A stretch of 64,000 bases of DNA from Macrostomum hystrix (lineage: Eukaryota > Animalia > Platyhelminthes): assembly GCA_950097015.1 (NCBI GenBank), contig CATNEN010000001.1, forward strand, positions 18,476,001 to 18,540,000. The letters are read 5' to 3'. The notes under the pieces were generated by a model. It saw nothing but the letters and a program-made list of their open reading frames with translations. It did not search any database and was not told the DNA's origin. The position numbers and the translations under genes are program-made. Shown piece after piece: positions 178-17,572 of the stretch. Positions within the stretch are counted from its first letter, which is position 1. Every line of letters begins with the position of its first letter.

Positions 178-321
178 ATCTTCCACCTGACATCATTCCA
201 AATTGCAGTGGAGGAGGGAAGGCAGATCTTCCACCTGACATCATTCCAAATTGCAGTGGAGGAGGGAAGGCAGATCTTCCACCTGACATCATTCCAAATT
301 GCAGTGGAGGAGGGAAGGCAG
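178..321. repeat. 48-bp tandem repeat x3
   Basis: atcttccacctgacatcattccaaattgcagtggaggagggaaggcag three times. Confidence 0.95.
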
Positions 322-336
322 TTTGTTGCCAGCAGC

Positions 337-1134
337 ATGCTATCTAACAACGGGAATGAGCAGCAGCTGGTTGATCTGGAGAACAAACCAAAGAGTCGCG
401 GTCCCAGGGTGATCAGCACTGGCCTGATGCGAACTGGCACTAATGCACAGATGCTGGCTCTGGAGAAGCTGCTCGGCGGTCGCTGCTACCATATGCAAGT
501 GATCATGTCCGAGAAGAAGGACCATATGAAGCTCTGGTACAAAGCCGCCACAATGGGTCTGACTAGAGAACTAGCCGACCAAATATTCGACGGTTTCAGT
601 TCGGCTGCGGACTTTCCAACAGCAATGTTCTACCCGGAGTTGGTTGAGCTTTATCCCGATGCCAAATTCGTGCTCAGCGTGCGAGATCCAAAGCGTTGGG
701 CGACTAGCATGCAGCTCACAGTGGGCAAGGTGTACAGGGCTGTTGGTCGCATGTTGCCGCCCTGTCGCTGGCTGTGGGGCCTGACCTATTTTAAACGGCT
801 TCACGACGCCATCTTTCAGTCCAGATTGCCGCTGAATTTCGACATGTCCGAAGAAGAACTTGTCGCAGTGTTTGAGCGTCACAGCGAGGCTGTAATAAGG
901 ACTATTCCCGCGGACAAGCTGTTGCTGTATCGTGTCACAGACGGTTGGGAGCCATTGTGCAAGCACCTGGATCTGCCAGTGCCTGATAAACCGTTTCCGC
1001 ATGTTCAAGACAGCAAAGAGTTTGAATTCTTTGCCAATTTTATTAGCATAGCGGCTGTGGTCACTAATGTGACTCTCTGCTCCATTGCGGGAGCTGTAGT
1101 CCTTGTCATTGTTGGTTTATTTTGGCTGCGTTGA
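337..1134 (+). CDS. Sulfotransferase, SULT-OR/Sulfotransfer_4-like, copy 1 (265 aa)
   Basis: Motifs GLMRTGT (5'-PSB loop), CYHM, DFP, LSVRDP, DGWEPLC. The first real ATG is at 337 after ttgccag/cag; the ORF extension from 112 is a 48-bp repeat. C-terminal hydrophobic helix. Confidence 0.9.
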   Translation: MLSNNGNEQQLVDLENKPKSRGPRVISTGLMRTGTNAQMLALEKLLGGRCYHMQVIMSEKKDHMKLWYKAATMGLTRELADQIFDGFSSAADFPTAMFYPELVELYPDAKFVLSVRDPKRWATSMQLTVGKVYRAVGRMLPPCRWLWGLTYFKRLHDAIFQSRLPLNFDMSEEELVAVFERHSEAVIRTIPADKLLLYRVTDGWEPLCKHLDLPVPDKPFPHVQDSKEFEFFANFISIAAVVTNVTLCSIAGAVVLVIVGLFWLR

Positions 1135-1606
1135 AACTTAAACTGATGCGACTGTTGACGTTCACATAGTACATGAGCAACTGGAAAGTGAACTCATGCT
1201 TAGCTAGTTTTCCAGTGATACCTCAGTTTTTTCTTTTTTTATTAGACATTTTAATTTCTTTACAATGTTCGCTGAACGGATACTCATTCCTTTCGCTTTA
1301 TCTTTTGCATTTTCTTTCGCTAAAGTATATTTTACATGTTAGTCACCTAAGCAATTTATTTTTGCAGTATTTACCATATACTGCAAACAAAAACTTGTGC
1401 TTTTCTTACTTTTTAAAAGTACAACTTTATTTTTTTCCAACTTAGAATTTTTTTCAGTTTTTTTTTCGACGAATTTTGCGCTTCTATGTTCTTTGATTCA
1501 TTGTTCTATGTTCATTGATGCTCATTGATGCTCATGTAGTAAATGATAAATGATTTTTGATACCAATGCTTTGTTTTTCGCCAACCAAAAAATTTGGTTA
1601 ATTGGG

Positions 1607-1661
1607 TGGACCTGCAGCCAGCGAGGAGGCAATTCTGCCCATTCAGGTGACTCCTGAGCAG

Positions 1662-1693
<32 letters not shown>

Positions 1694-1890
1694 AGGGGTG
1701 TGTATCTGCCCTGAGCTTTTTATTGTCAGGCAGTGCACACACTCACTGGGCCTAGGTGGTAGGCCCTCAGAGGCGTAGATTGCATGACAAGCCACCAAGC
1801 CTTCTCTCCGCGGCTGCGCCCCAAATGAATGTGACCTCGCCGTTCAATCCAGGGACTTTAGTGCAAGGTGCAGACGCTTAATACCGCATG
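1607..1890 (-). mobile_element. tRNA-derived SINE family A copy with internal (CA)n
   Basis: Reverse complement matches the element at 32914/52690 (ggggcgcagccgcggagagaaggctt...gggcagaattgcctcctcgctgg). Confidence 0.75.
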
Positions 1891-2164
1891 CTATATGCTC
1901 ACAACTATTGACTGGCTACGTGCAATATGGCCTTTTGAAATTAAATTCTTGTTTTTTGCAATTGCAATCATTAAATTGAGCAAATTCTGAAATATTCTGA
2001 AATTAGCATAGTAGTCGGTTTCTTGGTTTTTACATGCTTGTTCTACCTTCGCTTGTAAAGTACTGTTCCGTTTTTAATTAATAATGGCGAGTGTCATTCG
2101 ATGTCAAAAGACTTCTGATCACATTTCAGCACTAGCAAAGTGCAGCAATTTTTGACCAATCAAA

Positions 2165-2941
2165 ATGGTTAGCCAGCTACAACAGAAGCAGCCAACCTCT
2201 GGCCCATTGGTGATTGGCGTTGGCCTAATGAGAACTGGCACCAATTCGCAGATGAAGGCACTTGAAATCTTGCTTGGCGGTCCGTGCTATCACATGATGG
2301 TCATCATGGGACAGAAGCGGCATCACCTTCAACTCTGGTACAAGGCCTCCAAAGAGGGCCTGACGAAGGAGACGGCCGACAAGATGCTTGGCGGCTTCAG
2401 CGCCTCCACAGACTTTCCAACGGCTCATTTCTATCCGGAACTGATGGAGATTTATCCCGATGCCAAGTTTGTGCTGAGCGTCCGCGAGCCCAAGCGCTGG
2501 GTGGAGAGTGTTCGCGGCACGATCTTTCAGGGCATGAAGGCTATTGGTCGAATGTTGCCGCCCACCCTGTGGCTCTTCGGTCTCACCTACTTCCTGCCTC
2601 TGCATCACAGCGTACTGCAGTCTCGCTTGGGTCTACGGTTTGACATGTCCGACGAAGAGATGATGCAAGTGTTTCATAGGCACACGGAGGCTGTCAAGAG
2701 AACCATTCCGAAGGAGCGCCTGTTGGTGTTCAAAGTGTCGGACGGCTGGGATCCGTTGTGCCAGTTTCTCGGCCTGCCCGTGCCGGATGTTCCATTTCCT
2801 AATGTGAACGATACGGCTCAGTTTAAAAAAGTTGTCCTGCTCATGAACGTGTTTGGCGCGCTGGGTAATTTGGGCTTCTGCTCGGCTGTTGGGGTAGCGG
2901 CGTGGTTCGGCTGCAAGTACTGTCTCCGTAATTTCGCCTGA
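2165..2941 (+). CDS. Sulfotransferase, SULT-OR-like, copy 2 (258 aa)
   Basis: Same motif set (GLMRTGT, CYHM, TDFP, LSVREP, DGWDPLC, FPNVN). Acceptor catttcag ends at 2129. Confidence 0.92.
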   Translation: MVSQLQQKQPTSGPLVIGVGLMRTGTNSQMKALEILLGGPCYHMMVIMGQKRHHLQLWYKASKEGLTKETADKMLGGFSASTDFPTAHFYPELMEIYPDAKFVLSVREPKRWVESVRGTIFQGMKAIGRMLPPTLWLFGLTYFLPLHHSVLQSRLGLRFDMSDEEMMQVFHRHTEAVKRTIPKERLLVFKVSDGWDPLCQFLGLPVPDVPFPNVNDTAQFKKVVLLMNVFGALGNLGFCSAVGVAAWFGCKYCLRNFA

Positions 2942-3549
2942 TGGCGTCGAAGCCTTCTGATGGCATACTGAGCTTATCCTGTGGAGTTTTTGGCTCGCAT
3001 CAATTTAGTGACTTAACTAAATAAGTAGTGTCGCATGTTTTTCGTTGCTTGATTCTTCCTTGATTGGCTCATTGATTTCGAAGCATAAATGTTCCCCTAT
3101 TTTTATTTTACCTGTCGCTTTTTACAAGTTTAGATTGCAATTTAAAAAAAAAAATACAAAATACTCTTCATTTCTTTTTTTGTCAATGCTTTATCGGTCC
3201 ACTGTGGTTTGATACTCGTAATCGCAGGTAAATTTTCTTGCTGTTTTGCCCACTTTTTTGGCAACTCAAGCATTAGAAAACAGTTATGAATTTCGCTCTT
3301 ACAATTTTATATTATTGCTATAGTTGCTATTCTATGCATTATAGAATCACACCTTATCGGAATATTTATTGATTTAGTTTGCTTAGATTGCTTTGCTTCT
3401 AAAAACGGGTATGTTTGCAATTTTTGTTGTGTCTTTAGCTGTCAAATTAGGCAATAAATTTTACTAAATGCTTTTCCTACTGGTTGAAAGTCTTACATTT
3501 TCGTTCTTTGTCGGAAAATTTTAGTCCGATTCGATTTAGTTAAAGGATA

Positions 3550-5470
3550 GCTTCAGGCAGTGAAAGTTGGTCTTTAGTTTCAGGCAGTGAAAGTCTGTCT
3601 TTAGTTTCAGGCAGTGAAGTCTGTCTTTAGTTTCAGGCAGTGAAAGTCTGTCTTTAGTTTCAGGCAGTGATAGTCTGTCTTTAGTTTCAGGCAGTGAAAG
3701 TCTGTCTTTAGTTTCAGGCAGTGATAGTCTGTCTTTAGTTTCAGGCAGTGAAAGTTGGTCTTTAGTTTCAGACAGTGAAAGTCTGTCTTTAGTTTCAGGC
3801 AGTGAAAGTCTGTCTTTAGTTTCAGGCAGTGATAGTCTGTCTTTAGTTTCAGGCAGTGAAAGTCTGTCTTTAGTTTCAGGCAGTGATAGTCTGTCTTTAG
3901 TTTCAGGCAGTGAAAGTTGGTCTGTAGCTTCAGGCAGTTAAAGTCTGTCTTTAGTTTCAGGCAGTGATAGTCTGTCTTTAGTTTCAGGCAGTGAAAGTTG
4001 GTCTGTAGCTTCAGGCAGTGAAAGTCTGTCTTTAGTTTCAGGCAGTGATAGTCTGTCTTTAGTTTCAGGCAGTGAAAGTCTGTCTTTAGTTTCAGGCAGT
4101 GAAAGTCTGTCTTTAGTTTCAGGCAGTGATAGTCTGTCTTTAGTTTCAGGCAGTGATAGTCTGTCTTTAGTTTCAGGCAGTGATAGTCTGTCTGTAGCTT
4201 CAGGCAGTGAAAGTCTGTCTTTAGTTTCAGGCAGTGAAAGTCTGTCTTTAGTTTCAGGCAGTGAAAGTCTGTCTTTAGTTTCAGGCAGTGAAAGTCTGTC
4301 TTTAGTTTCAGGCAGTGAAAGTCTGTCTTTAGTTTCAGGCAGTGAAAGTTGGTCTGTAGCTTCAGGCAGTGAAAGTCTGTCTTTAGTTTCAGGCAGTGAT
4401 AGTCTGTCTTTAGTTTCAGGCAGTGAAAGTCTGTCTTTAGTTTCAGGCAGTGAAAGTCTGTCTTTAGTTTCAGGCAGTGATAGTCTGTCTTTAGTTTCAG
4501 GCAGTGATAGTCTGTCTTTAGTTTCAGGCAGTTAAAGTCTGTCTGTAGCTTCAGGCAGTGAAAGTCTGTCTTTAGTTTCAGGCAGTGAAAGTCTGTCTTT
4601 AGTTTCAGGCAGTGAAAGTCTGTCTTTAGTTTCAGGCAGTGAAAGTCTGTCTTTAGTTTCAGGCAGTGAAAGTCTGTCTTTAGTTTCAGGCAGTTAAAGT
4701 CTGTCTTTAGTTTCAGACAGTGAAAGTCTGTCTTTAGTTTCAGGCAGTGAAAGTCTGTCTTTAGTTTCAGGCAGTGAAAGTCTGTCTTTAGTTTCAGGCA
4801 GTGAAAGTCTGTCTTTAGTTTCAGGCAGTGAAAGTCTGTCTTTAGTTTCAGGCAGTGATAGTCTGTCTTTAGTTTCAGGCAGTGAAAGTTGGTCTGTAGC
4901 TTCAGGCAGTGAAAGTCTGTCTTTAGTTTCAGGCAGTGAAAGTCTGTCTTTAGTTTCAGGCAGTGAAAGTCTGTCTTTAGTTTCAGGCAGTTAAAGTCTG
5001 TCTTTAGTTTCAGACAGTGAAAGTCTGTCTTTAGTTTCAGGCAGTGAAAGTCTGTCTTTAGTTTCAGACAGTGAAAGTCTGTCTTTAGTTTCAGGCAGTG
5101 AAGTCTGTCTTTAGTTTCAGGCAGTGAAAGTCTGTCTTTAGTTTCAGGCAGTGAAAGTCTGTCTTTAGTTTCAGGCAGTGAAAGTCTGTCTTTAGTTTCA
5201 GGCAGTGAAAGTCTGTCTTTAGTTTCAGGCAGTGAAAGTCTGTCTTTAGTTTCAGGCAGTCAAAGTCTGTCTTTAGTTTCAGGCAGTGAAAGTCTGTCTT
5301 TAGTTTCAGGCAGTTAAAGTCTGTCTTTAGTTTCAGGCAGTGAAAGTTGGTCTGTAGCTTCAGGCAGTGAAAGTTGGTCTGTAGCTTCAGGCAGTGAAAG
5401 TTGGTCTGTAGCTCCTGGCAGTGAAAGTTGGTCTGTAGCTCCTGGCAGTGAAAGTTGGTCTGTAGCTTCA
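3550..5470. repeat. 27-bp minisatellite (about 70 copies)
   Basis: Unit ttcaggcagtgaaagtctgtctttagt. Confidence 0.97.
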
Positions 5471-5532
5471 TGAAGTTGATCCATTTCATTGTATTGCACT
5501 CTCAGGTGATTAGACTGCGAAGACTGTTAGCA

Positions 5533-6309
5533 ATGCAGCGCGTTCTTCAACAGCAGCAGAGCAGCTCCGAGCTGATGGTGATTGGCGCCGGCCTAATGCG
5601 GACTGGCACCAATTCGCAGATGAAAGCGCTGGAGATTCTGTACGGCAGTCGCTGCTACCACATGGAAGTGATTCTCAAGGAGAGACGCCATCATTTCAAG
5701 CTGTGGTACCAAGCTACAATGAATGGCCTGACCAAGGAACTGGCCTACGAAATCTTCGACGGCTTTCGCCTAACCACAGACTTTCCAGCGGCGCATTTCT
5801 ACGAGGAGCTAATGGAGATTTATCCCAACGCCAAGTTCGTGCTCAGTGTTCGCGATCCCAAACAATGGGTAGCCAGTGTTCGCGGCACCGTTTTGATGAT
5901 GAGCAAAGCACTTAACAGTATGCTGCCACCTGTCCGGTGGCTGATGGGCTTGACTTACTTATCGCCAGTGATTGAACTCATTCTGAAACGGCGTCTCGGC
6001 TTTGAGTTCAACATGACAGATGAAGAAATGATTCAGGTGTTCAATCGCCACACCGAAGCTGTGAAGCGGGTCATTCCCGAGGAGCGCCTGTTGGTGTTTC
6101 GAGTGTCAGACGGTTGGGAGCCATTGTGCAAGTTTCTCGGCTTGCCAGTTCCCGAACAGCCGTTTCCCAATGTGAACGACACCGAGCATTTCCAGCGTAG
6201 AACGCGCTTTATTCGCGCAACTGGCGCCGTGCTGAACGTAGCGTTCTGCGCCGCCGTTGGCTCGGCTGTCTGGTTCGGCGCCAAGTCCTGCCTGCGCAGA
6301 TGGGGCTGA
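5533..6309 (+). CDS. Sulfotransferase, SULT-OR-like, copy 3 (258 aa)
   Basis: Same motifs. Acceptor ctctcag ends at 5505; ATG at 5533 (MQRVLQQ). Confidence 0.9.
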   Translation: MQRVLQQQQSSSELMVIGAGLMRTGTNSQMKALEILYGSRCYHMEVILKERRHHFKLWYQATMNGLTKELAYEIFDGFRLTTDFPAAHFYEELMEIYPNAKFVLSVRDPKQWVASVRGTVLMMSKALNSMLPPVRWLMGLTYLSPVIELILKRRLGFEFNMTDEEMIQVFNRHTEAVKRVIPEERLLVFRVSDGWEPLCKFLGLPVPEQPFPNVNDTEHFQRRTRFIRATGAVLNVAFCAAVGSAVWFGAKSCLRRWG

Positions 6310-6691
6310 AATAATGATGACTATTAGATGGGGCTTCGTGCACTTCTGTATGTCACAGATTTGCTATTGTTCTATTTATTTTATACTCCTACGCCTGTAG
6401 ACTTTTTAACTAGAAATACATTTTCCTCTTTTTCGAAGCTTTCTTCTCTCGATTTACATAACTGAAGAGCATAAAATAGCATAACTTATTTATACAATTG
6501 TCTTCTTCTTCTCAAAACATGCTTCGAATAAACTTAACGCAATTTTATCAAATACGACAAAATGCACAAGTTTTAGTGTTTGCCAATAAAAAATTGTTTT
6601 TTTCGATTTTTTAGTCTGTCTAAAAAACTAAAATAGGTAAAAATAGCACTGACGAATTAAAAATTTTACTGCAAGGAATTTCAAATTTACA

Positions 6692-6750
6692 GGCGGTCAG
6701 TGGCTGAGCGGTTAACGCGTTTTCCTCTCGCGCCAAGGTCCCGAGAGGAA
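6692..6750 (+). mobile_element. SINE family A, 5' head fragment
   Basis: gtggctgagcggttaacgcgttttcctctcgcgccaaggtccc matches the SINE head (A box). Confidence 0.65.
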
Positions 6751-6794
6751 CCAAATTTTCATCTCCAATTTTCCTGTTTTCAGATCGGCAGACC

Positions 6795-7577
6795 ATGGCC
6801 TTCAGCAAAGAGCCTTCAAGCCGGCTCCCATCAACTGGTCCATTGGTGATTGGTGCCGGCCTGATGAGAACTGGCACCAACTCGCAAATGAAAGCCCTGG
6901 AGATCTTGTTAGGCGGTCGTTGCTACCACATGAAGGTTTTGATGTCTGAGAGACGACCCCATGTCCGGCTGTGGTACAAAGCCACCAGGCAGGGCATGAC
7001 GAAGGCGCTGGCTGACGAACTTCTCGACGGTTTCGTCGCAACGACAGACTTTCCGGCTGCTCATTTCTACGCTGAGTTTGCTGAGATTTATCCGAACGCC
7101 AAGTTTGTGCTCAGCGTGAGAGACCCGGTGCGCTGGGTGCGCAGTGTTCGAGCCACTATTCAGAAAGGCACTGAAATAGTAAAAAAGCTTTACTTGCCGG
7201 TCCAGTGGCTGATGGGCATTCACTACTACCACCCGCTTATCACCGACCTGTTAAATTCGCGTCTAAATTTTCGATTCGAAATGTCCGACGAAGACATGAT
7301 TAGATCGTTCGAAGAGCACATTGGAGCCGTTCGGGGGACTATTCCGAAAGAGCGCTTGTTAGTGTTTCGCGTTGCTGATGGTTGGGAGCCGCTGTGCGAA
7401 TTCTTGCAGCTCCCTGTGCCCCAGGTACCGTTTCCCAATGTAAACGACACTGAGGAGTTTCAGAGAGGCTTGACCAACTTTAACATTGTGGTGGCTGCCT
7501 ACAATGCGGCCTTTTGCTGCTTTGTTGGAGCCGGCCTTTGGTTTGGAGCCAAATTCTTCTTGAAGAACTGGTGCTGA
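6795..7577 (+). CDS. Sulfotransferase, SULT-OR-like, copy 4 (260 aa)
   Basis: Same motifs. Acceptor ttttcctgttttcag ends at 6783. Confidence 0.92.
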   Translation: MAFSKEPSSRLPSTGPLVIGAGLMRTGTNSQMKALEILLGGRCYHMKVLMSERRPHVRLWYKATRQGMTKALADELLDGFVATTDFPAAHFYAEFAEIYPNAKFVLSVRDPVRWVRSVRATIQKGTEIVKKLYLPVQWLMGIHYYHPLITDLLNSRLNFRFEMSDEDMIRSFEEHIGAVRGTIPKERLLVFRVADGWEPLCEFLQLPVPQVPFPNVNDTEEFQRGLTNFNIVVAAYNAAFCCFVGAGLWFGAKFFLKNWC

Positions 7578-7897
7578 CCACAGATTCGACGTCTCTTTGT
7601 TAAATTCTAGGATCATTCGAAGTATACACTAAATCAGTTTTCAAGTTTTCGAAATTCTTTCAAATTTTTGTATTCCGCCTCCTGTCTAGGTTCATATATT
7701 CATTTTTGCCTTTCAACCCGTTCTGTCTTCCGTCTAATATGTGACTGCATTGTGTCTGTGATATTTATGCTCGTACATTTTTCTAAAGCAAGCTCATCAC
7801 CTCACGTTTTTAGGTACTTTTTGAAATTCATACAAAAAACGGCTTAATTTTCTTTTAAATTGAAAGCTATTTACTAAACTAGGCGTTGCAGAATTAT

Positions 7898-9178
7898 TGT
7901 CAGTGTCAGAGTTGTCAGGAAAGAGTCAGTTTCAGAGTTGTCAGGAAAGAGTCAGTGTCAGAGTTGTCAGGAAAGAGTCAGTGTCAGAGTTGTCAGGAAA
8001 GAGTCAGTTTCAGAGTTGTCAGGAAAGAGTCAGTTTCAGAGTTGTCAGGAAAGAGTCAGTGTCAGAGTTGTCAGGAAAGAGTCAGTTTCAGAGTTGTCAG
8101 GAATGAGTCAGTGTCAGAGTTGTCAGGAAAGAGTCAGTGTCAGAGTTGTCAGGAAAGAGTCAGTTTCAGAGTTGTCAGGAAAGAGTCAGTTTCAGAGTTG
8201 TCAGGAAAGAGTCAGTGTCAGAGTTGTCAGGAAAGAGTCAGTTTCAGAGTTGTCAGGAATGAGTCAGTGTCAGAGTTGTCAGGAAAGAGTCAGTTTCAGA
8301 GTTGTCAGGAATGAGTCAGTTTCAGAGTTGTCAGGAATGAGTCAGTGTCAGAGTTGACAGGAAAGAGTCAGTTTCAGAGTTGTCAGGAAAGAGTCAGTGT
8401 CAGAGTTGTCAGGAAAGAGTCAGTTTCAGAGTTGTCAGGAAAGAGTCAGTTTCAGAGTTGTCAGGAAAGAGTCAGTTTCAGAGTTGTCGGGAAAGAGTCA
8501 GTTTCAGATTTATCAGAAATAGTCAAGTGTCAGATCTATCAGAAAAAGTCAAGTGTCAGATTTATCAAAAATTGTCAAGTGTCAGATTTATCAGAAATTG
8601 TCAAGTGTCAGATTTATCAGAAATAGTCAAGTGTCAGATTTATCAGAAATTGTCAAGTGTCAGATTTATCAAAAATTGTCAAGTGTCAGATTTATCAGAA
8701 ATAGTCAAGTGTCAGATTTATCAGAAATTGTCAAGTGTCAGATTTATCAGAAATTGTCAAGTGTCAGATTTATCAGAAATAGTCAAGTGTCAGATCTATC
8801 AGAAATTGTCAAGTGTCAGATTTATCAGAAATAGTCAAGTGTCAGATTTATCAGAAATTGTCAAGTGTCAGATTTATCAGAAATTGTCAAGTGTCAGATT
8901 TATCAGAAATTGTCAAGTGTCAGATTTATCAGAAATTGTCAAGTGTCAGATTTATCAGAAATAGTCAAGTGTCAGATTTATCAGAAATTGTCAAGTGTCA
9001 GATTTATCAGAAATTGTCAAGTGTCAGATTTATCAGAAATTGTCAAGTGTCAGATTTATCAGAAATAGTCAAGTGTCAGATTTATCAGAAATAGTCAAGT
9101 GTCAGATTTATCAGAAATAGTCAAGTGTCAGATTTATCAGAAATAGTCAAGTGTCAGATTTATCAGAAATAGTCAAGC
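7898..9178. repeat. 26-bp minisatellite, two sub-arrays
   Basis: gtcagtgtcagagttgtcaggaaaga to about 8505, then gtcaagtgtcagatttatcagaaatt. Confidence 0.97.
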
Positions 9179-9213
9179 TGAGTGAAACTAGCCGTATTTA
9201 TCCTTGCAGGCTG

Positions 9214-10005
9214 ATGGACCCATCGAAATTAAACCATGATGACAGCAACGGAGGTGGTGCTTCAACTGGTCCACTGGTGATTGGTGCAGGTCTGATGCGA
9301 ACTGGTACAAAGTCGCAGATGAAAGCTCTGGAGATCCTTCTAGGCGGTCGCTGCTACCACATGGAAGTGATCATGACAAAGAGAAAGTCGGATTTGAAGC
9401 TCTGGTACCAAGCAGCCAAAAGCGGTTTAACTAAAGACTTGTCCGACCAACTATTCGATGGATTCACGTGTTGCACAGACTTCCCGGCTGCACACTTTTA
9501 TTCGGAATTGATGTCAATATATCCCAACGCTAAGTTTGTGCTCAGCGTTCGAGATCCTAAACGATGGGTTGAGAGCATTCGCTGTACTATTATTCAGGTT
9601 AGCGTTAACCTGCACCTACTGTTCCCTCCTATGCGTTGGCTACTAAATATGTCATATTATCTGCCCTTGATGGAAACATTGTGCTCAAGAATTGGACTTC
9701 GATTCGATATGACAGACGACGAGATGATCCGTGCATTCAATAGGCACACGGAAGACGTGAAACGCGTCATTCCCAAGGAGCGCCTGTTGGTGTTTCGAGT
9801 GACCGACGGTTGGGAGCCATTGTGCAAGTTCCTTAATTTGCCAATTCCTAACGAACCGTTTCCCAATATCAACGATTCGGAGCACTTTAAACGTCGCGTG
9901 GCTTTTATTCGTAAGCGCCGCATACTGCTCAATGTGGCCTTCTGTGCCGTAGCCGGATCTGCCATCTGGTTCAGTGCTAGGCACCTGTTGAAATGCTACT
10001 TTTGA
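9214..10005 (+). CDS. Sulfotransferase, SULT-OR-like, copy 5 (263 aa)
   Basis: Same motifs. Acceptor tccttgcag ends at 9209; ATG at 9214 (MDPSKL). Confidence 0.9.
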   Translation: MDPSKLNHDDSNGGGASTGPLVIGAGLMRTGTKSQMKALEILLGGRCYHMEVIMTKRKSDLKLWYQAAKSGLTKDLSDQLFDGFTCCTDFPAAHFYSELMSIYPNAKFVLSVRDPKRWVESIRCTIIQVSVNLHLLFPPMRWLLNMSYYLPLMETLCSRIGLRFDMTDDEMIRAFNRHTEDVKRVIPKERLLVFRVTDGWEPLCKFLNLPIPNEPFPNINDSEHFKRRVAFIRKRRILLNVAFCAVAGSAIWFSARHLLKCYF

Positions 10006-10549
10006 CCGTAGAAATATCACGGGGTATTTCAATTACCAACATTTTTCTGTTTTTCTGTATCTCCGATTTTGTCGGAGTGTCTGGTGGCGAGAACCACAAA
10101 TACGAGTGGGTATTTGAAATGCCCCGTGGACTAATGACAAGCAATGACAAGCAATTACAAGCAAGACTGGCAAGCTCATTTTGCTTTGAGAATGTTTGTG
10201 TGTTCGTAATTTTCTATATTTATTGGGTCTGTCTTTAAATTGTTTGCCTGTGTATGTTTTTAACGCCTCAAAGAATCTGCAAAACTGTTTGTATGACCAA
10301 AGAAGATACTGTTGATCAATTTTTTATCCCATGCTTCATTATGCTTAATTAATATTGCAAGCTTTAGTTTCCAATAGCCTCCAATAACAAATATACTTTT
10401 TCATTGTAGAGACTTTTAAATCAATACGAATATTTATTGTTTGTGCTCTGGGGAGCAAAAGCTGACATTCAGAATCTAACTAATCCCCTTATTTGCAAAT
10501 TATCCTCACATTAAGCCAATATTTTGCCCTCATTGCGCTAATAATCCCA

Positions 10550-11820
10550 TAATAGCAGCAGGGAACCAATGTCCCCCAGCAGCAGAGAACCAATGTCCCC
10601 CTAGCAGCAGAGAACTAATGTTCCCCTAGCAGCAGAGAACCAATGTCCCCCTAGCAGCAGAGAACCAATGTCCCCCAGCAGCAGAGAACCAATGTTCCCC
10701 TAGCAGCAGAGAACCAATGTCCCCCTAGCAGCAGAGAACCAATGTTCCCCTAGCAGCAGAGAACCAATGTTCCCCCTAGCAGCAGAGAACCAATGTCCCC
10801 CCAGCAGCAGAGAACCAATGTTCCCCCAGCAGCAGAGAACTAATGTTCCCCCAGCAGCAGAGAACCAATGTTCCCCTAGCAGCAGAGAACCAATGTCCCC
10901 CTAGCAGCAGAGAACCAATGTCCCCCAGCAGCAGAGAACCAATGTCCCCCTAGCAGCAGAGAACCAATGTTTCACCCCAGCAGCAGAGAACCAATGTCCC
11001 CCCAGCAGCAGAGAACCAATGTTCCACCCCAGCAGCAGAGAACCAATGTTCCCCTAGCAGCAGAGAACCAATTATCCCCTAGCATCAGAGAACCAATGTC
11101 CCCCCAGCAGCAGAGAACCAATGCCCCCTAGCAGCAGAGAACCAATGTCCCCCCTAGCAGCAGAGAACCAATGTCCCCCTAGCAGCAGATAAGCAATGTC
11201 CCCTAGCAGCAGAGAACCAATTATCCCCTAGCATCAGAGAACCAATGTCCCCCCAGCAGCAGAGAACCAATGCCCCCTAGCAGCAGAGAACCAATGTCCC
11301 CTAGCAGCAGAGAACCAATGTCCCCCCAGCAGCAGAGAACCAATGTCCCCCCAGCAGCAGAGAACCAATGTCCCCCCAGCAGCAGAGAACCAATGTCCCC
11401 CCAGCAGCAGAGAACCAATGTCCCCCCCAAGCAACAGCGAACTAATGTCCCCCTAGCAGCAGAGAACCAATGTCCCCTAGCAGCAGAGAACCAATGTCCC
11501 CCCAGCAGCAGAGAACCAATGTCCCCCCAGCAGCAGAGAACCAATGTCCCCCCAGCAGCAGAGAACCAATGCCCCCTAGCAGCAGAGAACCAATGCCCCC
11601 TAGCAGCAGAGAACCAATGTCCCCCCAGCAGCAGAGAACCAATGTCCCCCCAGCAGCAGAGAACCAATGTCCCCCCAGCAGCAGAGAACCAATGTCCCCC
11701 CAGCAGCAGAGAACCAATGCCCCCTAGCAGCAGAGAACCAATGTCCCCCCTAGCAGCAGATAAGCAATGTCCCCCCAGCAGCAGAGAACCAATGTCCCCC
11801 CCTAGCAGCAGAGAACCAAT
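10550..11820. repeat. Minisatellite of roughly 25-30 bp with variable C-run
   Basis: Unit agcagcagagaaccaatgt(c)n. Confidence 0.96.
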
Positions 11821-11947
11821 GAATGCCCAGCAAACGCTTAATTTTCGGTTTATCGACATCCAAATGAAAATTTAGCGGTATAGAATAAGCTTATGTCATA
11901 ATCGACAACGTTAAATTTTTATTTCAGTTTTCTAAGCTCGGTTTTGA

Positions 11948-12718
11948 ATGTCTGAAAGCAGCGGCAGAAACTCCTCAGAACTGTTAGTGATTGGTGCCGG
12001 CATGATGAGAACTGGCACCAATTCGCAGATGAAAGCTCTTGAGATTCTACTCAACGGTCGCTGCTACCACATGGAGTACATCATGAGCCACAACAGGGAT
12101 CACCTGCGCCTGTGGTATGAGGCCGCTGTCGACGGCTTGACAAAGGAGCGCGCCGACAAGATCTTCAAAGGATTTCGTGCCAGCACCGACTTTCCAGCTG
12201 CTCATTTTTATCAGGAAATAATGGAGATTTATCCCAACGCCAAGTTTATCCTCAGTGTTCGCGATCCCGAACGATGGGTGCAGAGTGTCAGGGCCACCGT
12301 GTTCAGGGCCAGGGGCTCCATCAGCTCTGTCCTGCCGCCTGTTCTGTGGCTTCTCGGCCTTCATTATATGAACCCGCTGCAATTCGCCATGCAGTCTCGC
12401 ATGGGAGTCAGTCCGGATATGTCAGACGACCAGCTGATTGAAGGATTCAAGCGACACAACGAAGCTGTGATGCAGACTATTCCGAAGGAGCGCCTGCTGG
12501 TTTTCCGTGTCTCGGATGGCTGGGAGCCGTTGTGCCAGTTTCTCAACCTTCCAGTGCCAGACGTTCCGTTTCCGAATGTGAACGATACCCAGCACTTTCA
12601 GCGCAGAACCCGCAACATCTTCATTGCTGGCTGGCTGCTGAATGCTGCGTTCTGCGCCGCGGTTGGCGCAGCGGCTTGGTTCGGTGGCAAATTTGGCCTG
12701 CAGATCCTGGCTGCTTGA
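11948..12718 (+). CDS. Sulfotransferase, SULT-OR-like, copy 6 (256 aa)
   Basis: GMMRTGT, CYHM, TDFP, DGWEPLC, FPNVN. Acceptor ttttatttcag ends at 11927. Confidence 0.92.
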   Translation: MSESSGRNSSELLVIGAGMMRTGTNSQMKALEILLNGRCYHMEYIMSHNRDHLRLWYEAAVDGLTKERADKIFKGFRASTDFPAAHFYQEIMEIYPNAKFILSVRDPERWVQSVRATVFRARGSISSVLPPVLWLLGLHYMNPLQFAMQSRMGVSPDMSDDQLIEGFKRHNEAVMQTIPKERLLVFRVSDGWEPLCQFLNLPVPDVPFPNVNDTQHFQRRTRNIFIAGWLLNAAFCAAVGAAAWFGGKFGLQILAA

Positions 12719-13253
12719 CCTCAGGCCAAGATAAGTTCTAGGTGCTATTTTGCTATTTTTAAGCTTCAGTAGTTCATATTATGTTTTGGTCTATTCAAGC
12801 TATTCTCCAATGAAGGAATAATAAACCTCTGATCTGTTCATTCTGTGATCATCCAGTTTGGTGGCCGATTTTTCATTTTTTATTCTCGAATTCACTTTCC
12901 AATACGCTCCGAGCTTTACACAATCTCATTATATGTTTTACAGCAATTTCAATGATTAAAAAGGTTGATTCGCAACGCGAAGTTTTAAATAATTTTTTCC
13001 TTGTCGATTCCAAATTTTTACACTATCCTTTTATCGTATTTATGCAAGTGTTTTTAACTGCCTTTTTAGTAATTTTCAATTGACATTATTTTTTAAAGTG
13101 TGCTATTGTTTTTTAGTATCTATTCGACTATTCGACAGTTTAACTTTTCAATAAAGATCACTTTTAGATTTTTTAAATGTTGCTTTTTTTCTTACTTATT
13201 TGACGGTGTCGAGGCCAAAATGACATTATTTTGGAGTTATCGAATCATCCACG

Positions 13254-14285
13254 AGGTCGGTGGCACAGCGTTCTAACGCGTTTGCCTCTCGTGCCAAGGT
13301 CTTTGAGCTCGATTCCGCGATGAGGCCACATTTTTTTTCGGCGCAGCCGCGGAGAGAAGGTTTGGGGGGCTTGTCGTGCAATTTACGCCCTTGAGAACCA
13401 ACCCCATGCGAGGCACAGAGAGTGTGTGCCTGTGTACGGTATCTGTGCCTGTGTACGGTATCTGTGCCTGTGTACGGTATCTGTGTGCCTGTGTACGGTA
13501 TCTGTGTGCCTGTGTACGGTATCTGTGTGCCTGTGTACGGTATCTGTGTGTGTGTACGGTATCTGTGTGCCTGTGTACGGTATCTGTGTGCCTGTGTACG
13601 GTATCTGTGTGTGTGTACGGTATCTGTGCCTGTGTACGGTATCTGTGCCTGTGTACGGTATCTGTGTGCCTGTGTACGGTATCTGTGTGCCTGTGTACGG
13701 TATCTGTGTGCCTGTGTACGGTATCTGTGTGTGTGTACGGTATCTGTGTGCCTGTGTACGGTATCTGTGTGCCTGTGTACGGTATCTGTGTGCCTGTGTA
13801 CGGTATCTGTGTGCCTGTGTACGGTATCTGTGTGCCTGTGTACGGTATCTGTGTGCCTGTGTACGGTATCTGTGTGCCTGTCTACGGTATCTGTGTGCCT
13901 GTGTACGGTATCTGTGTGCCTGTCTACGGTATCTGTGTGCCTGTCTACGGTATCTGTGTGCCTGTGTACGGTATCTGTGTGCCTGTGTACGGTATCTGTG
14001 TGTGTGTACGGTATCTGTGTGCCTGTGTACGGTATCTGTGTGCCTGTCTACGGTGTCTGTGTGCCTGTCTACGGTATCTGTGTGCCTGTCTACGGTATCT
14101 GTGTGCCTGTCTACGGTATCTGTGTGCCTGTCTACGGTATCTGTGTGCCTGTGTACGGTATCTGTGTGTGTGTACGGTATCTGTGCCTGTGTACGGTATC
14201 TGTGTGCCTGTGTACGGTATCTGTGTGCCTGTGTACGGTATCTGTGGGCCTCTGTACGGTATGTGTGCGTGTGTTCAGGAGTCAA
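13254..14285 (+). mobile_element. SINE family A copy interrupted by an expanded 21-bp minisatellite
   Basis: SINE head and body at 13254-13420; SINE sequence resumes as gtgtgttcaggagtca at about 14270. Confidence 0.75.
13425..14262. repeat. 21-bp (19-bp variants) minisatellite
   Basis: Unit ctgtgtgcctgtgtacggtat. Confidence 0.96.
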
Positions 14286-14424
14286 CGGGATAATTTTCTA
14301 CTGTCCGCAGCCCTGCAGCTCCAGAGTTTATTTCTCGCCTTCAGACATTTTCTCCTGACCGAAATTCTAGATTCCGAACACATCGCTGCTGCAGCAGCAA
14401 TAACAGCAGATCTGCTAAATAAAC

Positions 14425-15198
14425 ATGGATACAGATCAAAGGAATGATCAGAAATCGAATCTACTGGTGATCAGTGTCGGCCTGATGCGTACTGGAACGA
14501 GTTCTCAGAAGAAGGCATTTGAAATTCTACTTGGCGGTCGTTGCTATCACATGGAGTACATACTGTATGAAAATCGATCCCATTTGAAGCTGTGGCATAG
14601 GGCCGCCACGAGAGGCCTAACTAAGGAATTGGCAGATGAAATCTTTCATGGATTTACTGCTTGCGCGGATTTCCCAGCTGCACTGTTCTACGCTGACCTA
14701 GTTCAGCTCTATCCCAATGCCAAGTTTGTCCTCAGCGTTCGAGAGCCCAAGCGATGGGCGGACAGTATGAGGGCAACAATTCTGCGCATCTCCAAGGTGA
14801 CTGATAATGTACTGTCACCTGTGCTGTACCTTATTGGTCTCTACTACGTTGCTAAGCTGAGAGAAATTCTTATCGAATCGCGACTTGGTGTTAAAATTGA
14901 AGCTAGCGACAATGAGATGATCAGGGCGTTTCATCGTCACACCGAGGCTGTCATGAAGGTCATACCCAAGGAGCGCCTGTTGGTATTCCGTGTCTCGGAT
15001 GGCTGGGAGCCATTGTGCCAGTTTCTCGACCTTCCAGTGCCGGATGTTCCGTTTCCGAATGTAAACGACGTGTCAGAATTTCAACTGAAAACTAGGGGCA
15101 TTTGGATGAGTAGTACTATGCTCAATTTCACCTTCTGTGCCACCGTGGGCACGGCCATCTGGTTCGCCGCCAAGTACTGCCTTCGGCGCTGGGGTTAG
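14425..15198 (+). CDS. Sulfotransferase, SULT-OR-like, copy 7 (257 aa)
   Basis: Same motifs. Acceptor tttctcgccttcag ends at 14344. Confidence 0.92.
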   Translation: MDTDQRNDQKSNLLVISVGLMRTGTSSQKKAFEILLGGRCYHMEYILYENRSHLKLWHRAATRGLTKELADEIFHGFTACADFPAALFYADLVQLYPNAKFVLSVREPKRWADSMRATILRISKVTDNVLSPVLYLIGLYYVAKLREILIESRLGVKIEASDNEMIRAFHRHTEAVMKVIPKERLLVFRVSDGWEPLCQFLDLPVPDVPFPNVNDVSEFQLKTRGIWMSSTMLNFTFCATVGTAIWFAAKYCLRRWG

Positions 15199-15409
15199 GA
15201 CTTGACTGGCTTCCAGCTGGTATCTACGAGACAACTCTCCACCAATCAGAGAACTATCGATTCTCACATTTCATTTCGTACTTTTGTACAGTTGGCGTTT
15301 GTTCTCCCGTATTTTTGTTCGTAGTTTTTATGGTCTATGAAGTCAGTGATCTTTCGACATCATGCGCAGCATAAGACATCGAGTTACATTTTAGTTGGCT
15401 GTTAGGGAA

Positions 15410-16185
15410 TGACGATTAAGGTTGTATGACCAGATAAGCATGATGATTAAGGATGTATGACCAGATAAGCATGATGATTAAGGATGTATGACCAGATAAG
15501 CATGATGATTAAGGATGCATGACCAGATAAGCATGATGATTAAGGATGTATGACCAGATAAGCATGATGATTAAGGATGTATGACCAGATAAGCATGATG
15601 ATTAAGGATGTATGACCAGATAAGCATGATGATTAAGGATGTATGACCAGATAATCATCATGATTAAGGTTATATGACCAGATAATCATCATGATTAAGG
15701 ATGTATGACCAGATAAGCATGATGATTAAGGATGTATGACCAGATAAGCATGATGATTAAGGATGTATGACCAGATAATCATCATGATTAAGGTTATATG
15801 ACCAGATAATCATCATGATTAAGGATGTATGACCAGATAATCATCATGATTAAGGATGTATGACCAGATAATCATCATGATTAAGGTTATATGACCAGAT
15901 AATCATCATGATTAAGGATGTATGACCAGATAATCATCATGATTAAGGATGTATGACCAGATAATCATCACGATTAAGGTTGTATGACCAGATAAGCATG
16001 ATGATTAAGGATGTAAGACCAGATAAGCATGATGATTAAGGATGTAAGACCAGATAAGCATGATGATAAGGATGTATGACCAGATAAGCATGATGATTAA
16101 GGATGTATGACCAGATAATCATCATGATTAAGGTTGTATGACCAGATAATCATCATGATTAAGGTTTTATGACCAGATAAGCATG
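15410..16185. repeat. 31-bp minisatellite
   Basis: Unit gatgattaaggatgtatgaccagataagcat. Confidence 0.96.
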
Positions 16186-17522: not shown

Positions 17523-17572
17523 TTCTGAACGAGTTGTTTTCCAATCAGCCCTATAAATTTTCTGAGTTGCAG

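What the first reader, a model, noticed from the sequence alone, without database searches (positions are those of the whole stretch)
337..15198. Tandem array of seven diversified SULT-OR-type sulfotransferases: candidate chemical-defence or small-molecule sulfation system
Seen in sequence: seven intact, co-oriented paralogs of 256-265 aa with no intron in the CDS. The PAPS-binding and catalytic motifs are conserved (GxMRTGT, CYHM, DFP, LSVR, DGWxPLC), while the central helical segment between LSVR and the acidic 'DEEM' motif differs strongly in every copy. Established knowledge: this motif set is the Sulfotransfer_4 family, which includes the Schistosoma oxamniquine-activating SULT-OR and many fungal and bacterial proteins, and is distinct from vertebrate cytosolic SULTs. 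Inference: a lineage-specific expansion with a diversified acceptor pocket for xenobiotic detoxification or for sterol/hormone/pheromone sulfation. The intronless CDSs would also fit a retro- or horizontally acquired founder.
Basis: partly seen in the sequence, partly recalled or inferred. Interest (0 to 1): 0.82.

Follow-up and report, generated by a model that had tools for sequence, protein, structure and literature searches.

The report
Nine-gene flatworm sulfotransferase tandem array
A free-living flatworm genome carries a tandem row of intact, intron-free genes for small-molecule sulfotransferases related to the schistosome enzyme that activates the drug oxamniquine; it is a real but fairly ordinary expansion of a known family.

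Summary
All seven ORFs are intact, full-length Pfam Sulfotransfer_4 (PF17784) proteins (E 1e-59 to 1e-64). Two more intact copies lie just upstream of the window, so the array has nine genes and no fragments.

The genome is a Macrostomum species other than M. lignano. The best hits are M. lignano proteins at 55-79% identity, and four array members have starred 1:1 M. lignano partners, a fifth weaker one. The expansion is therefore old and maintained (omega about 0.18).

A predicted model (pLDDT 95) matches schistosome SULT structures. The variable segment covers the helices that carry oxamniquine contacts in SmSULT-OR. It is 38% identical among paralogs but 46-88% between orthologs.

Horizontal transfer is not supported. 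The nearest relative is a two-intron paralog on another contig of the same genome, and flatworm monophyly is not rejected.

All copies carry a C-terminal hydrophobic helix that is common in the family (129 of 273 stored hits).

New here: spliced-leader acceptor motifs precede 8 of 9 start codons, and repeat-adjusted spacers are about 1 kb or less, which suggests an operon. Substrate and role remain unknown.

The parts
337..1134 (+). Copy C (third gene of the nine-gene array), 265 aa, Sulfotransfer_4 plus C-terminal hydrophobic helix
   Evidence: PF17784 E 3.6e-59, profile 1-215. Best KD19 of 2.48 at residue 245. M. lignano ortholog is P0057, 100/100*.
2165..2941 (+). Copy D, 258 aa
   Evidence: PF17784 E 2.2e-64. 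Ortholog is P0001, 72% identity and 100/98*. PDB hits at E 6e-36 to 7e-31.
5533..6309 (+). Copy E, 258 aa
   Evidence: PF17784 E 1.3e-63. No M. lignano partner was found among the stored hits.
5514..5525 (+). 12-nt exact match to the core of the spliced leader, ending 7 nt before the ATG of copy E: possible relic spliced leader
   Evidence: Smith-Waterman score against the own-genome SL (L019) is 24, reached by 2 of 2000 shuffles. The other eight copies and the C11 paralog are at chance. The flanks do not extend ungapped: 3/11 and 5/14 matches.
6795..7577 (+). Copy F, 260 aa; the copy that was modelled
   Evidence: PF17784 E 6.5e-62. AlphaFold2 pLDDT 95.0, pTM 0.88. Foldseek TM 0.71-0.76 to schistosome SULTs. 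VIA Z 25-27.
9214..10005 (+). Copy G, 263 aa
   Evidence: PF17784 E 2.7e-62.
11948..12718 (+). Copy H, 256 aa
   Evidence: PF17784 E 6e-64. Pairs with P0002 of M. lignano at weaker support, 91/56.
14425..15198 (+). Copy I, 257 aa; last gene of the array
   Evidence: PF17784 E 6.5e-61. Ortholog is P0004, 100/100*. Downstream neighbour is a TAFII28/TAF11-like ORF at 17534-18160.
3548..5470 (.). Minisatellite (27 bp x 71) filling most of the D-E spacer
   Evidence: TRF score 3328. Removing it shortens the spacer from 2591 to 668 nt.
7902..9177 (.). Minisatellite (26 bp x 49) in the F-G spacer
   Evidence: Spacer goes from 1636 to 360 nt.
10553..11821 (.). Minisatellite (25 bp x 51) in the G-H spacer
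   Evidence: Spacer goes from 1942 to 673 nt.
13423..14274 (.). Minisatellite (21 bp x 42) in the H-I spacer
   Evidence: Spacer goes from 1706 to 854 nt.

Best explanation
This is an old tandem expansion, predating the split of two Macrostomum species, of nine PAPS-dependent small-molecule O-sulfotransferases of the Sulfotransfer_4 / schistosome SULT-OR family.

Each protein keeps the cofactor loops and the catalytic aspartate. Each also has its own version of the three helices that roof the acceptor pocket, so the copies most likely sulfate different, probably hydrophobic, small acceptors.

Each ends in a roughly 20-residue hydrophobic helix followed by basic residues. I read this as a tail anchor that holds the catalytic domain on the cytosolic face of an internal membrane or lipid droplet, where PAPS is made.

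The genes lack introns because the founder, or the locus, passed through a reverse-transcribed mRNA. They are probably matured by spliced-leader trans-splicing, possibly from one or a few polycistronic precursors.

Shown here: family, fold, conserved catalytic residues, copy number, orthology and purifying selection. Inferred: substrate diversity, membrane topology, RNA-mediated origin and operon transcription.
For: Family and fold:
- PF17784 full length in 7 of 7 window copies, and 9 intact array matches in the genome.
- phmmer to PDB gives only SULT-OR-type chains: schistosome SULTs, plus the chains that Foldseek titles Cpz8 and SgdX2, at E 1e-31 to 1e-36.
- The model has pLDDT 95 and pTM 0.88.
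- Foldseek ranks 1-19 are all this family (TM 0.68-0.76 by query), then there is a gap to TPST at E 7.5e-05. VIA Z is 24.8-27.2, against 11 for the next fold.

Catalytic residues:
- The catalytic Asp (SmSULT-OR D91, named in PMC7167500) aligns with the invariant D of TDFP.
- The RTGT loop and the SVR...S motif are invariant or nearly so.

Age of the expansion:
- Array plus M. lignano proteins form one clade at 100/99*.
- The pairs A-P0003, C-P0057, D-P0001 and I-P0004 are starred.

Selection and the variable segment:
- Omega is 0.175 overall, 0.147 and 0.124 in the cores, and 0.186 in the segment.
- The segment is 38% identical among 36 paralog pairs, against 69% in the core. Between orthologs it is 88, 73, 68, 49 and 46%, against about 78% in the core. 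At least three copies therefore keep a private, conserved pocket roof.
- The segment aligns to SmSULT-OR residues about 127-157, which hold the named contacts L149 and T157. The three paper-named contact columns have mean entropy 1.84, against 0.89 for the domain (P 0.03).

Hydrophobic tail:
- KD19 is 1.7-2.5 in 8 of 9 copies.
- The model shows one continuous helix over residues 219-259.
- No PDB chain aligns to it.
- The same tail occurs in the C11 paralog, in planarian and trematode homologs, and in some bacterial ones.
- Aspergillus oryzae LdrG and LdrH, which are Sulfotransfer_4 proteins, sit on lipid droplets and ER (bioRxiv 10.1101/2022.11.24.517872, passages read).

Origin:
- The sister is a paralog with two GT-AG introns.

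Trans-splicing:
- The published M. lignano acceptor motif YTNCAG (PMC8629364) lies 4-35 nt before 8 of 9 ATGs. Background is 12-18%, binomial P about 5e-7 to 7e-6.
Against: - No expression, activity or localisation data could be reached.
- With my recalled extra contacts (V127, V128, E142) included, pocket-aligned columns are not significantly more variable (P 0.10). The sequence alignment to SmSULT-OR is weakest in exactly this segment.
- I had no model coordinates, so pocket versus surface position was not measured.
- Two of five ortholog pairs are poorly conserved in the segment (46-49%). That fits relaxed constraint as well as it fits specificity.
- Copy I's tail is only weakly hydrophobic (its best KD19 in the whole protein is 1.31, and it lies outside the tail).
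- The schistosome crystal structures also have a C-terminal helix. It aligns up to model residue 238 in SmSULT-OR and 256 in SjSULT. Part of the helix is therefore a domain element rather than an anchor.
- The LdrG precedent binds through amphipathic helices, not a transmembrane tail.
- Operon status rests on sequence motifs and spacing only. One repeat-adjusted spacer (1030 nt) exceeds the 1 kb criterion.
Confidence: 0.7

Rival explanations
1. The variable segment reflects relaxed constraint in redundant duplicates, not diversified specificity. The nine enzymes would do essentially the same job, as gene dosage for one detoxification or housekeeping sulfation.
For: - Omega in the segment (0.186) is barely above the core (0.12-0.15) when branch lengths are free.
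- The pairs I-P0004 and H-P0002 are only 49% and 46% identical in the segment.
- With the wider contact list, variability at contact columns is not significant (P 0.10).
Against: - Nine of nine copies are intact after divergence deep enough to saturate synonymous sites (pS 0.71).
- There are no pseudogenes.
- In three ortholog pairs the segment is as conserved as the core (88, 73 and 68%), which simple redundancy does not predict.
Confidence: 0.15
2. The proteins are non-enzymatic membrane or lipid-droplet organisers, like the Aspergillus LdrG/LdrH Sulfotransfer_4 proteins, and use the fold as a scaffold.
For: - LdrG and LdrH carry PF17784, localise to lipid droplets, and their deletion alters droplet number and size (bioRxiv 10.1101/2022.11.24.517872, passages).
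- The array proteins have hydrophobic C-terminal helices.
Against: - The PAPS-loop residues and the catalytic Asp are invariant in all nine copies and in their M. lignano orthologs. A pure scaffold need not keep them.
- The preprint passages I read do not show LdrG/H to be inactive, so the two roles are not exclusive.
Confidence: 0.07
3. The founder of the array was acquired horizontally from a bacterium, which would explain the intronless CDSs.
For: - In single-sequence searches the best non-Macrostomum hits are metagenomic and bacterial proteins at 41-46% identity (for example a Pseudenhygromyxa protein at 44%). Planarian and trematode homologs are 31-36% identical.
- The three-way relation of the Macrostomum clade, the other flatworms and the remaining rows is unresolved.
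Against: - The array's sister (92/91) is a same-genome paralog with two canonical introns plus its M. lignano ortholog P0058.
- The family is present in Schmidtea and in at least eight trematode genera.
- Holding all 31 flatworm rows together costs 0.00 log-likelihood units, p-AU 0.52.
- The array is embedded between NDUFV1-like and TAF11-like genes on a 27.6-Mb contig.
Confidence: 0.05

Closest known systems
Schistosoma mansoni SmSULT-OR (Smp_089320; PDB 4MUA/4MUB) and the S. haematobium and S. japonicum homologs
   Same: - Same Pfam family and same fold: Foldseek TM 0.71-0.76, VIA Z about 25, 30-34% identity.
- Same phylum.
- Same P-loop-like RTGT motif and same catalytic Asp position.
- The endogenous substrate is likewise unknown (bioRxiv 10.1101/236539, passage).
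   Different: - SmSULT-OR has two exons (PMC6834289); the array CDSs have none.
- After the last block that aligns by sequence, the array proteins have 38 residues and the SmSULT-OR chain 24. That stretch includes a hydrophobic segment to which no PDB chain aligns by sequence.
- The residues at the named contact positions differ. F39 becomes D/E/Q/M/K and T157 becomes S/H/I/M/Q/R.
- In the tree the array does not group with the trematode rows sampled, which form a separate starred clade. SmSULT-OR itself was not among the stored proteins.
Fluke-specific expansion of the SULT-OR sulfotransferase family (Comparative genomics of the major parasitic worms)
   Same: It is a lineage-specific expansion of the same family within Platyhelminthes, with unknown biological role.
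   Different: - This one is in a free-living macrostomorph.
- It is a strict head-to-tail array of nine intronless genes.
- It predates the split from M. lignano.
Streptomyces Cpz8 (caprazamycin; PDB 9KF1/9KF2) and SgdX2 (PDB 8Y9P), bacterial small-molecule sulfotransferases
   Same: Same family and fold, with the highest sequence identity among solved structures: 37-40%, VIA Z 25.8-27.2, rmsd 2.0-2.9. By their entry titles both act on natural-product intermediates.
   Different: They are shorter (Cpz8 chain 212 aa; SgdX2 256-aa chain with 195 residues in the structure) with no C-terminal hydrophobic helix in the aligned part. They are encoded in bacterial biosynthetic contexts, which I recall and did not check here.
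Aspergillus oryzae LdrG/LdrH (Sulfotransfer_4 proteins on lipid droplets)
   Same: They are PF17784 proteins attached to ER and lipid-droplet membranes, and they form a paralogous pair.
   Different: - Attachment is reported to be through amphipathic helices.
- The fungal rows in my tree are a distant clade on a branch of 1.28.
- No sulfotransferase activity is discussed in the passages I read.
SL-resolved operons of Macrostomum lignano
   Same: - Same-strand genes.
- The YTNCAG acceptor lies just upstream of the start codons.
- Spacers are inflated by repeats but are 1 kb or less after subtracting them.
- M. lignano operons reach nine genes (PMC8629364, passages).
- The names of the M. lignano orthologs of A and C (…019790g1 and g2) suggest two genes cut from one transcriptional unit. 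That reading of the names is my inference.
   Different: - No SL-containing reads or precursor transcripts were available for this genome.
- One spacer is 1030 nt.
- An operon made entirely of paralogs of one enzyme is not described in the passages I read.

Membership tests
Pfam PF17784 Sulfotransfer_4 (SULT-OR-type sulfotransferases) | Score above the curated gathering cut-off (22.8 bits) over the whole profile | tested here: met
   7 of 7 window copies score 200.6-217.7 bits over profile positions 1 or 2 to 215. All 9 array copies score 201-218 bits in the six-frame genome search.
Pfam PF17784 Sulfotransfer_4 (SULT-OR-type sulfotransferases) | 5'-phosphosulfate-binding loop (G-x-x-R-T-G-T) and 3'-phosphate motif (R...S after strand 'LSVR') | tested here: met
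   R, T, G, T, the R of LSVR and the following S are invariant in the 13-sequence alignment. R25 and T28 are invariant and R109 and S117 at least 90% conserved across 80 family members. Assigning these motifs to PAPS binding is established knowledge of sulfotransferases, which I recall.
Pfam PF17784 Sulfotransfer_4 (SULT-OR-type sulfotransferases) | Catalytic Asp equivalent to SmSULT-OR D91 | tested here: met
   D91 is named as catalytic in PMC7167500. By the phmmer alignment (chain index minus 2) it aligns to the D of TDFP, which is invariant in all 9 copies and 5 M. lignano orthologs.
Pfam PF17784 Sulfotransfer_4 (SULT-OR-type sulfotransferases) | SULT-OR fold | tested here: met
   Predicted model only: pLDDT 95.0. 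Foldseek ranks 1-19 are all this family, with E 4e-16 to 6e-14. VIA Z is 24.8-27.2 over 194-230 residues.
Pfam PF17784 Sulfotransfer_4 (SULT-OR-type sulfotransferases) | PAPS-dependent sulfate transfer to a small acceptor; oxamniquine activation | not testable with these tools
   This needs recombinant enzyme assays.
Tail-anchored membrane protein | Single hydrophobic helix of about 20 residues within the last 30-40 residues, a short basic C-terminal end, and no N-terminal signal or anchor | tested here: inconclusive
   - The best Kyte-Doolittle 19-mer is 1.7-2.5 and lies in the last 40 residues in 8 of 9 copies. Copy I is weaker.
- The model has a continuous helix over 219-259.
- No dedicated transmembrane predictor was run and no localisation data exist.
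- Part of the helix aligns with the C-terminal helix of the soluble schistosome enzymes.
SL trans-spliced operon (Macrostomum type) | Same orientation, with repeat-adjusted intergenic distance under 1 kb between trans-spliced genes | tested here: inconclusive
   All 9 genes are on one strand. Adjusted spacers are 485, 989, 1030, 668, 485, 360, 673 and 854 nt, so 7 of 8 are under 1 kb. The criterion comes from PMC8629364.
SL trans-spliced operon (Macrostomum type) | Trans-splice acceptor (YTNCAG) at the 5' end of each downstream gene | tested here: met
   8 of 9 genes have the motif 4-35 nt upstream of the ATG. Copy E has CTCTCAG instead. Background is 0.175 for random 60-nt windows and 0.125 upstream of 907 ATGs in the window. 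An ad hoc stricter acceptor definition gave only 5 of 9, P 0.02.
SL trans-spliced operon (Macrostomum type) | SL-bearing reads and a polycistronic precursor | not testable with these tools
   No RNA-seq is held. The only hint is the naming of the M. lignano orthologs as g1 and g2 of one unit.
Retrogene / cDNA-derived gene | Intronless CDS while the closest paralog has introns | tested here: met
   There are 9 uninterrupted CDSs. The C11 paralog has introns of about 86 nt and about 2035 nt with GT...AG ends. It is sister to the array at 92/91.
Retrogene / cDNA-derived gene | Footprints of an mRNA intermediate: DNA-encoded spliced-leader remnant, poly(A) remnant, target-site duplication | tested here: inconclusive
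   - Only copy E has an SL-like 12-mer next to its ATG. It is reached by 2 of 2000 shuffles, about 0.01 after 10 tests.
- Its flanks match the SL at chance level.
- There are no A-runs of 8 or more after the stops, except one of 11 A located 203 nt after copy D.
- Target-site duplications were not looked for.

The most novel reading that the evidence does not exclude
The array is a nine-gene, spliced-leader-resolved operon made entirely of paralogs of one enzyme. It was founded by a reverse-transcribed trans-spliced mRNA, of which copy E still carries a remnant. It encodes a set of tail-anchored sulfotransferases whose private pocket roofs are conserved between Macrostomum species. Because M. 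lignano is transgenic-tractable, it would be the first free-living system in which the unknown endogenous substrates of the schistosome drug-activating SULT-OR family could be found.
Probability: 0.25. Interest if true: 0.6.

Novelty: new member of a known kind. Interest (0 to 1): 0.38.

Why it matters
The SULT-OR family matters because one schistosome member turns oxamniquine into its toxic form, and loss of that member gives drug resistance. No animal member has a known natural substrate.

A conserved nine-gene array in a free-living flatworm genus that has transgenesis and RNAi offers a way to ask what these enzymes normally do. The array's paralog-specific pocket helices and probable membrane anchoring make that question more specific.

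As genome biology it is a compact case of three linked features: intron-free tandem paralogs, minisatellite-inflated spacers, and spliced-leader acceptors at each gene. Beyond that, it is an ordinary lineage-specific expansion of a known enzyme family.

Tried and rejected
I therefore could not test synteny, intron status or gene order of the M. lignano array, and had no ortholog DNA for dN/dS.

Site-wise positive selection: abandoned. Among the nine paralogs the mean pS is 0.71 (range 0.60-0.78), which is at saturation. Per-partition codon fits gave tree lengths of 22.6 and 76.4 for the short partitions, so the tail's omega of 0.036 is meaningless. The first two codon runs failed for technical reasons, a thread count and missing files.

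SmSULT-OR itself: I could not bring it into the tree. None of the three homolog searches listed it. PDB chains are not stored proteins, so I mapped residues by hand from the printed alignment.

Pocket versus surface mapping in 3D: not possible, because no model coordinates are returned.

Relic spliced leaders: looked for upstream of all nine genes and of the C11 paralog. Only E scored, and its flanks do not extend.

Poly(A) remnants and spacer homology: essentially none. There is one run of 11 A, and one 108-bp inverted match between two spacers. Only 121 nt of the B-C spacer were in that script.

Literature:
- 'Macrostomum' plus 'sulfotransferase': 2 papers, both irrelevant by their listing.
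- The five M. lignano locus numbers: 0 papers.
- 'SgdX2': only grant-number noise.
- 'Sulfotransfer_4': 3 papers.

I therefore found nothing in print on this array in those searches. Supplementary Fig. 7j of the helminth genomics preprint and the operon lists of the M. lignano papers may bear on the novelty and operon claims.

The scan's earlier notes hold nothing on sulfotransferases or operons here.

The C11 paralog was analysed as three separate pieces.

Full report
**The observation**

The window holds seven intact, same-strand ORFs at 337-1134, 2165-2941, 5533-6309, 6795-7577, 9214-10005, 11948-12718 and 14425-15198. I took the start codons at the ATG that aligns among the copies. Every one matches Pfam PF17784 (Sulfotransfer_4) over essentially the whole 215-position profile, with E 3.6e-59 to 2.2e-64. 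The only other matches are sub-threshold ones to Sulfotransfer_3. The copies are 49-55% identical to the first one.

A six-frame search of the window's own assembly (220 Mb, 42 contigs) with the same profile gave 12 matches. Nine are uninterrupted copies in one array on contig C1. Three are pieces of a single further gene on contig C11.

Two array copies lie just upstream of the window. Both are intact, so the array has nine genes, which I call A to I. tblastn with one copy found nothing else in the window, in locus L004 or in the stored 10 kb L013 (C1:18462001-18472000), so there are no fragments or pseudogenes.

The array sits between an NDUFV1-like gene and a TAF11-like ORF on a 27.6-Mb contig. 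It is ordinary nuclear DNA.

**Whose genome**

The best database hits are Macrostomum lignano proteins at 55-79% identity. A spliced-leader RNA gene in this assembly (L019) carries the 35-nt leader quoted for M. lignano in PMC8629364. It is followed by a GTAAG donor, a U-rich site and a hairpin.

The genome is therefore a Macrostomum species other than M. lignano. It is a free-living flatworm that trans-splices.

**Family and fold**

- phmmer against PDB sequences finds only SULT-OR-type chains. These are the S. haematobium, S. japonicum and S. mansoni sulfotransferases, plus the chains that Foldseek titles Streptomyces Cpz8 and SgdX2, at E 1e-31 to 1e-36.
- An AlphaFold2 model of copy F, built on an 80-sequence alignment, has mean pLDDT 95.0 and pTM 0.88.
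- Foldseek ranks 1-19 are all this family (TM 0.68-0.76 by query length). The next fold is tyrosylprotein sulfotransferase at E 7.5e-05.
- VIA-align gives Z 24.8-27.2 for the family, against 11 for the next fold.
- The printed alignment to the SmSULT-OR chain shows that chain index minus two equals residue number, since C35, F39 and E142 fall in place. On that numbering the catalytic D91 (PMC7167500, figure legend read) aligns with the D of the invariant TDFP motif.
- The RTGT loop and the SVR...S motif are invariant.

All nine proteins therefore look catalytically competent. Activity itself is untested.

**The variable segment**

- Among the 36 paralog pairs, identity is 69% in both core blocks, 38% in the 41-column central segment and 35% in the C-terminal tail.
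- The segment corresponds to three helices of the model, 111-130, 134-140 and 145-157.
- By the alignment it corresponds to SmSULT-OR residues about 127-157. That stretch contains the paper-named oxamniquine contacts L149 and T157, and the positions whose S. japonicum counterparts (V139, N140, N153) are discussed as active-site differences.
- Column entropy at the three named contacts (F39, L149, T157) averages 1.84, against 0.89 for the domain (P 0.03).
- Adding two positions that I inferred by offset gives P 0.013.
- Adding three contacts that I only recall (V127, V128, E142) gives P 0.10.

The evidence that variability targets the pocket is therefore suggestive and not firm.

The ortholog comparison is more telling. 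The same segment is 88%, 73% and 68% identical in the pairs A-P0003, C-P0057 and D-P0001, which is close to their core values of 77-81%. It is only 49% and 46% in I-P0004 and H-P0002. At least three copies have kept a private version of the pocket roof since the species split.

**Age and selection**

A 60-row maximum-likelihood tree gives these groupings:
- The nine copies and five M. lignano proteins form one clade at 100/99*.
- There are four starred one-to-one pairs and one weaker pair (H-P0002, 91/56).
- Copies B, E, F and G have no partner among the proteins retrieved.

The duplications therefore predate the split of the two species.

Synonymous sites among paralogs are saturated (mean pS 0.71), so site models would be uninformative. 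A one-ratio codon model gives omega 0.175. Spacers share no similarity apart from one 108-bp inverted match.

**Origin**

The sister of the array clade (92/91, not starred) is the third coding piece of the C11 gene together with M. lignano P0058. The C11 gene has three coding pieces separated by introns of about 86 and about 2035 nt, with GT...AG ends.

Planarian and trematode homologs form a separate starred clade, and the deeper relations are unresolved. Holding all 31 flatworm rows together costs no likelihood (p-AU 0.52). That group included two unnamed rows that I added after seeing the tree.

Single-sequence identity is somewhat higher to bacterial and metagenomic proteins (41-46%) than to other flatworms (31-36%). 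I read this as fast evolution in the parasite and planarian lines, but it keeps a small door open for transfer.

The simplest account is a vertically inherited flatworm gene whose duplicate lost its introns through an mRNA intermediate and then multiplied in tandem.

**A possible leader remnant**

Copy E has, ending 7 nt before its ATG, a 12-nt exact match to the core of the spliced leader (window 5514-5525).
- Against the own-genome leader this is matched by 2 of 2000 shuffles of its 100-nt upstream region.
- The other eight copies and the C11 gene are at chance.
- The flanks of the 12-mer do not match the leader ungapped, at 3/11 and 5/14.

I rate it about even odds as a true remnant. Dinoflagellate retrogenes tagged by DNA-encoded leader remnants are the known precedent (PMC12014239 and PMC5585692, abstracts seen in the listing).

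**Trans-splicing and operon reading**

The acceptor motif reported for M. lignano trans-splice sites is YTNCAG (PMC8629364, passage). It lies 4-35 nt upstream of 8 of 9 start codons. Background is 0.175 for random 60-nt windows and 0.125 upstream of all 907 ATGs in the window, giving binomial P of 7e-6 and 5e-7. A stricter definition of my own gave 5 of 9 (P 0.02).

Four of the eight spacers hold a large minisatellite (unit 21-27 bp; 852-1923 bp long), and the B-C spacer a 144-bp repeat. After subtracting the repeats, as that paper does, the spacers are 485, 989, 1030, 668, 485, 360, 673 and 854 nt. The paper's operon threshold is 1 kb, and its largest operons have nine genes.

The M. lignano orthologs of A and C are named ...019790g1 and g2. 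Given how that annotation cuts genes out of transcriptional units (PMC5730564, passages), the names suggest one precursor. That reading is my inference.

**The C-terminal helix**

All nine proteins continue about 38 residues beyond the last block that aligns to solved structures.
- The stretch contains a hydrophobic 19-mer with Kyte-Doolittle mean 1.7-2.5 in 8 of 9 copies. Copy I is weaker. The proteins end in basic residues.
- The model makes one uninterrupted helix of residues 219-259.
- No PDB chain aligns to the tail by sequence.
- Structurally, the schistosome enzymes' own C-terminal helix covers its first part.
- The tail is not special to this array. It is in the C11 paralog, the planarian and trematode homologs, fungal members and some Chloroflexi proteins.
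- In total 129 of 273 stored family members have it.
- An N-x3-C-x3-G-x3-W pattern is conserved along one face of the helix.

I infer a tail anchor, or a monotopic membrane or lipid-droplet attachment. The Aspergillus LdrG/LdrH proteins are a loose precedent.

**Verdict**

The finding is real and somewhat bigger than described. It is a new instance of a known kind, a lineage-specific expansion of the SULT-OR family. That family is already reported as expanded in flukes and has an unknown endogenous substrate.

The 'chemical defence' and hormone ideas remain guesses. The points of modest interest are the conserved paralog-specific pocket helices, the likely membrane anchoring, and the intronless, possibly polycistronic organisation in a genetically tractable genus.

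Noticed in passing
Own genome: 176 sites, e.g. L019 = G000:C1:16046422-16049433; L016, L017, L021-L024, L028, L029, L032, L033, L036, L039, L040, L042-L044: The 12-nt core of the spliced leader occurs 176 times in the assembly, against 31 for the reversed control. Of the 30 fetched sites, 21 extend to the rest of the leader on at least one side and 13 on both, but only one (L019) is followed by a GT donor. Several share further similarity both upstream and downstream of the leader. They may be leader-tagged retrocopies, SL RNA pseudogenes, or a repeat family that contains a leader-like part.
   Followed up: partly
G000:C15:9744-33045 and G000:C17:2779-120856: The same 12-mer recurs at a regular spacing of about 11.6 kb on two small contigs. 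This looks like a long tandem unit that carries an SL RNA gene, perhaps together with other RNA genes.
   Followed up: no
window 3548-5470, 7902-9177, 10553-11821, 13423-14274, 15409-16185, 16633-17493; also L013 about 5585-6560: Large minisatellites lie in four array spacers, in the DNA downstream of the array and inside the stretch between two NDUFV1-like coding pieces. Each has a different unit of 21-31 bp and 25-71 copies at 91-94% match. They create long spurious ORFs on both strands.
   Followed up: partly
window about 1735-1838 and about 13322-13429: A 108-bp match at 80% identity, in inverted orientation, is the only similarity between any two array spacers. It may be a small dispersed repeat.
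   Followed up: no
L014 = G000:C11:2630001-2640000, coding pieces about 3726-3862, 3950-4103, 6140-6603: This is the tenth Sulfotransfer_4 gene of the genome. It has two GT-AG introns, its own TTTCAG acceptor 29 nt before the ATG and the same kind of hydrophobic tail. Its M. lignano ortholog P0058 is named as gene 4 of a transcriptional unit. The pieces were not joined.
   Followed up: partly
window 17534-18160 (+) and L013 4950-7327 (+): The flanking genes are a single-ORF TAFII28/TAF11-like protein (PF04719, E 3e-33) downstream and NDUFV1-like exons (Complex1_51K, SLBB) upstream.
   Followed up: partly
window 178-321: A perfect 48-bp x 3 repeat sits immediately upstream of copy C's start codon. 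Each unit contains a TTGCAG acceptor-like motif, so copy C has several candidate acceptors.
   Followed up: no
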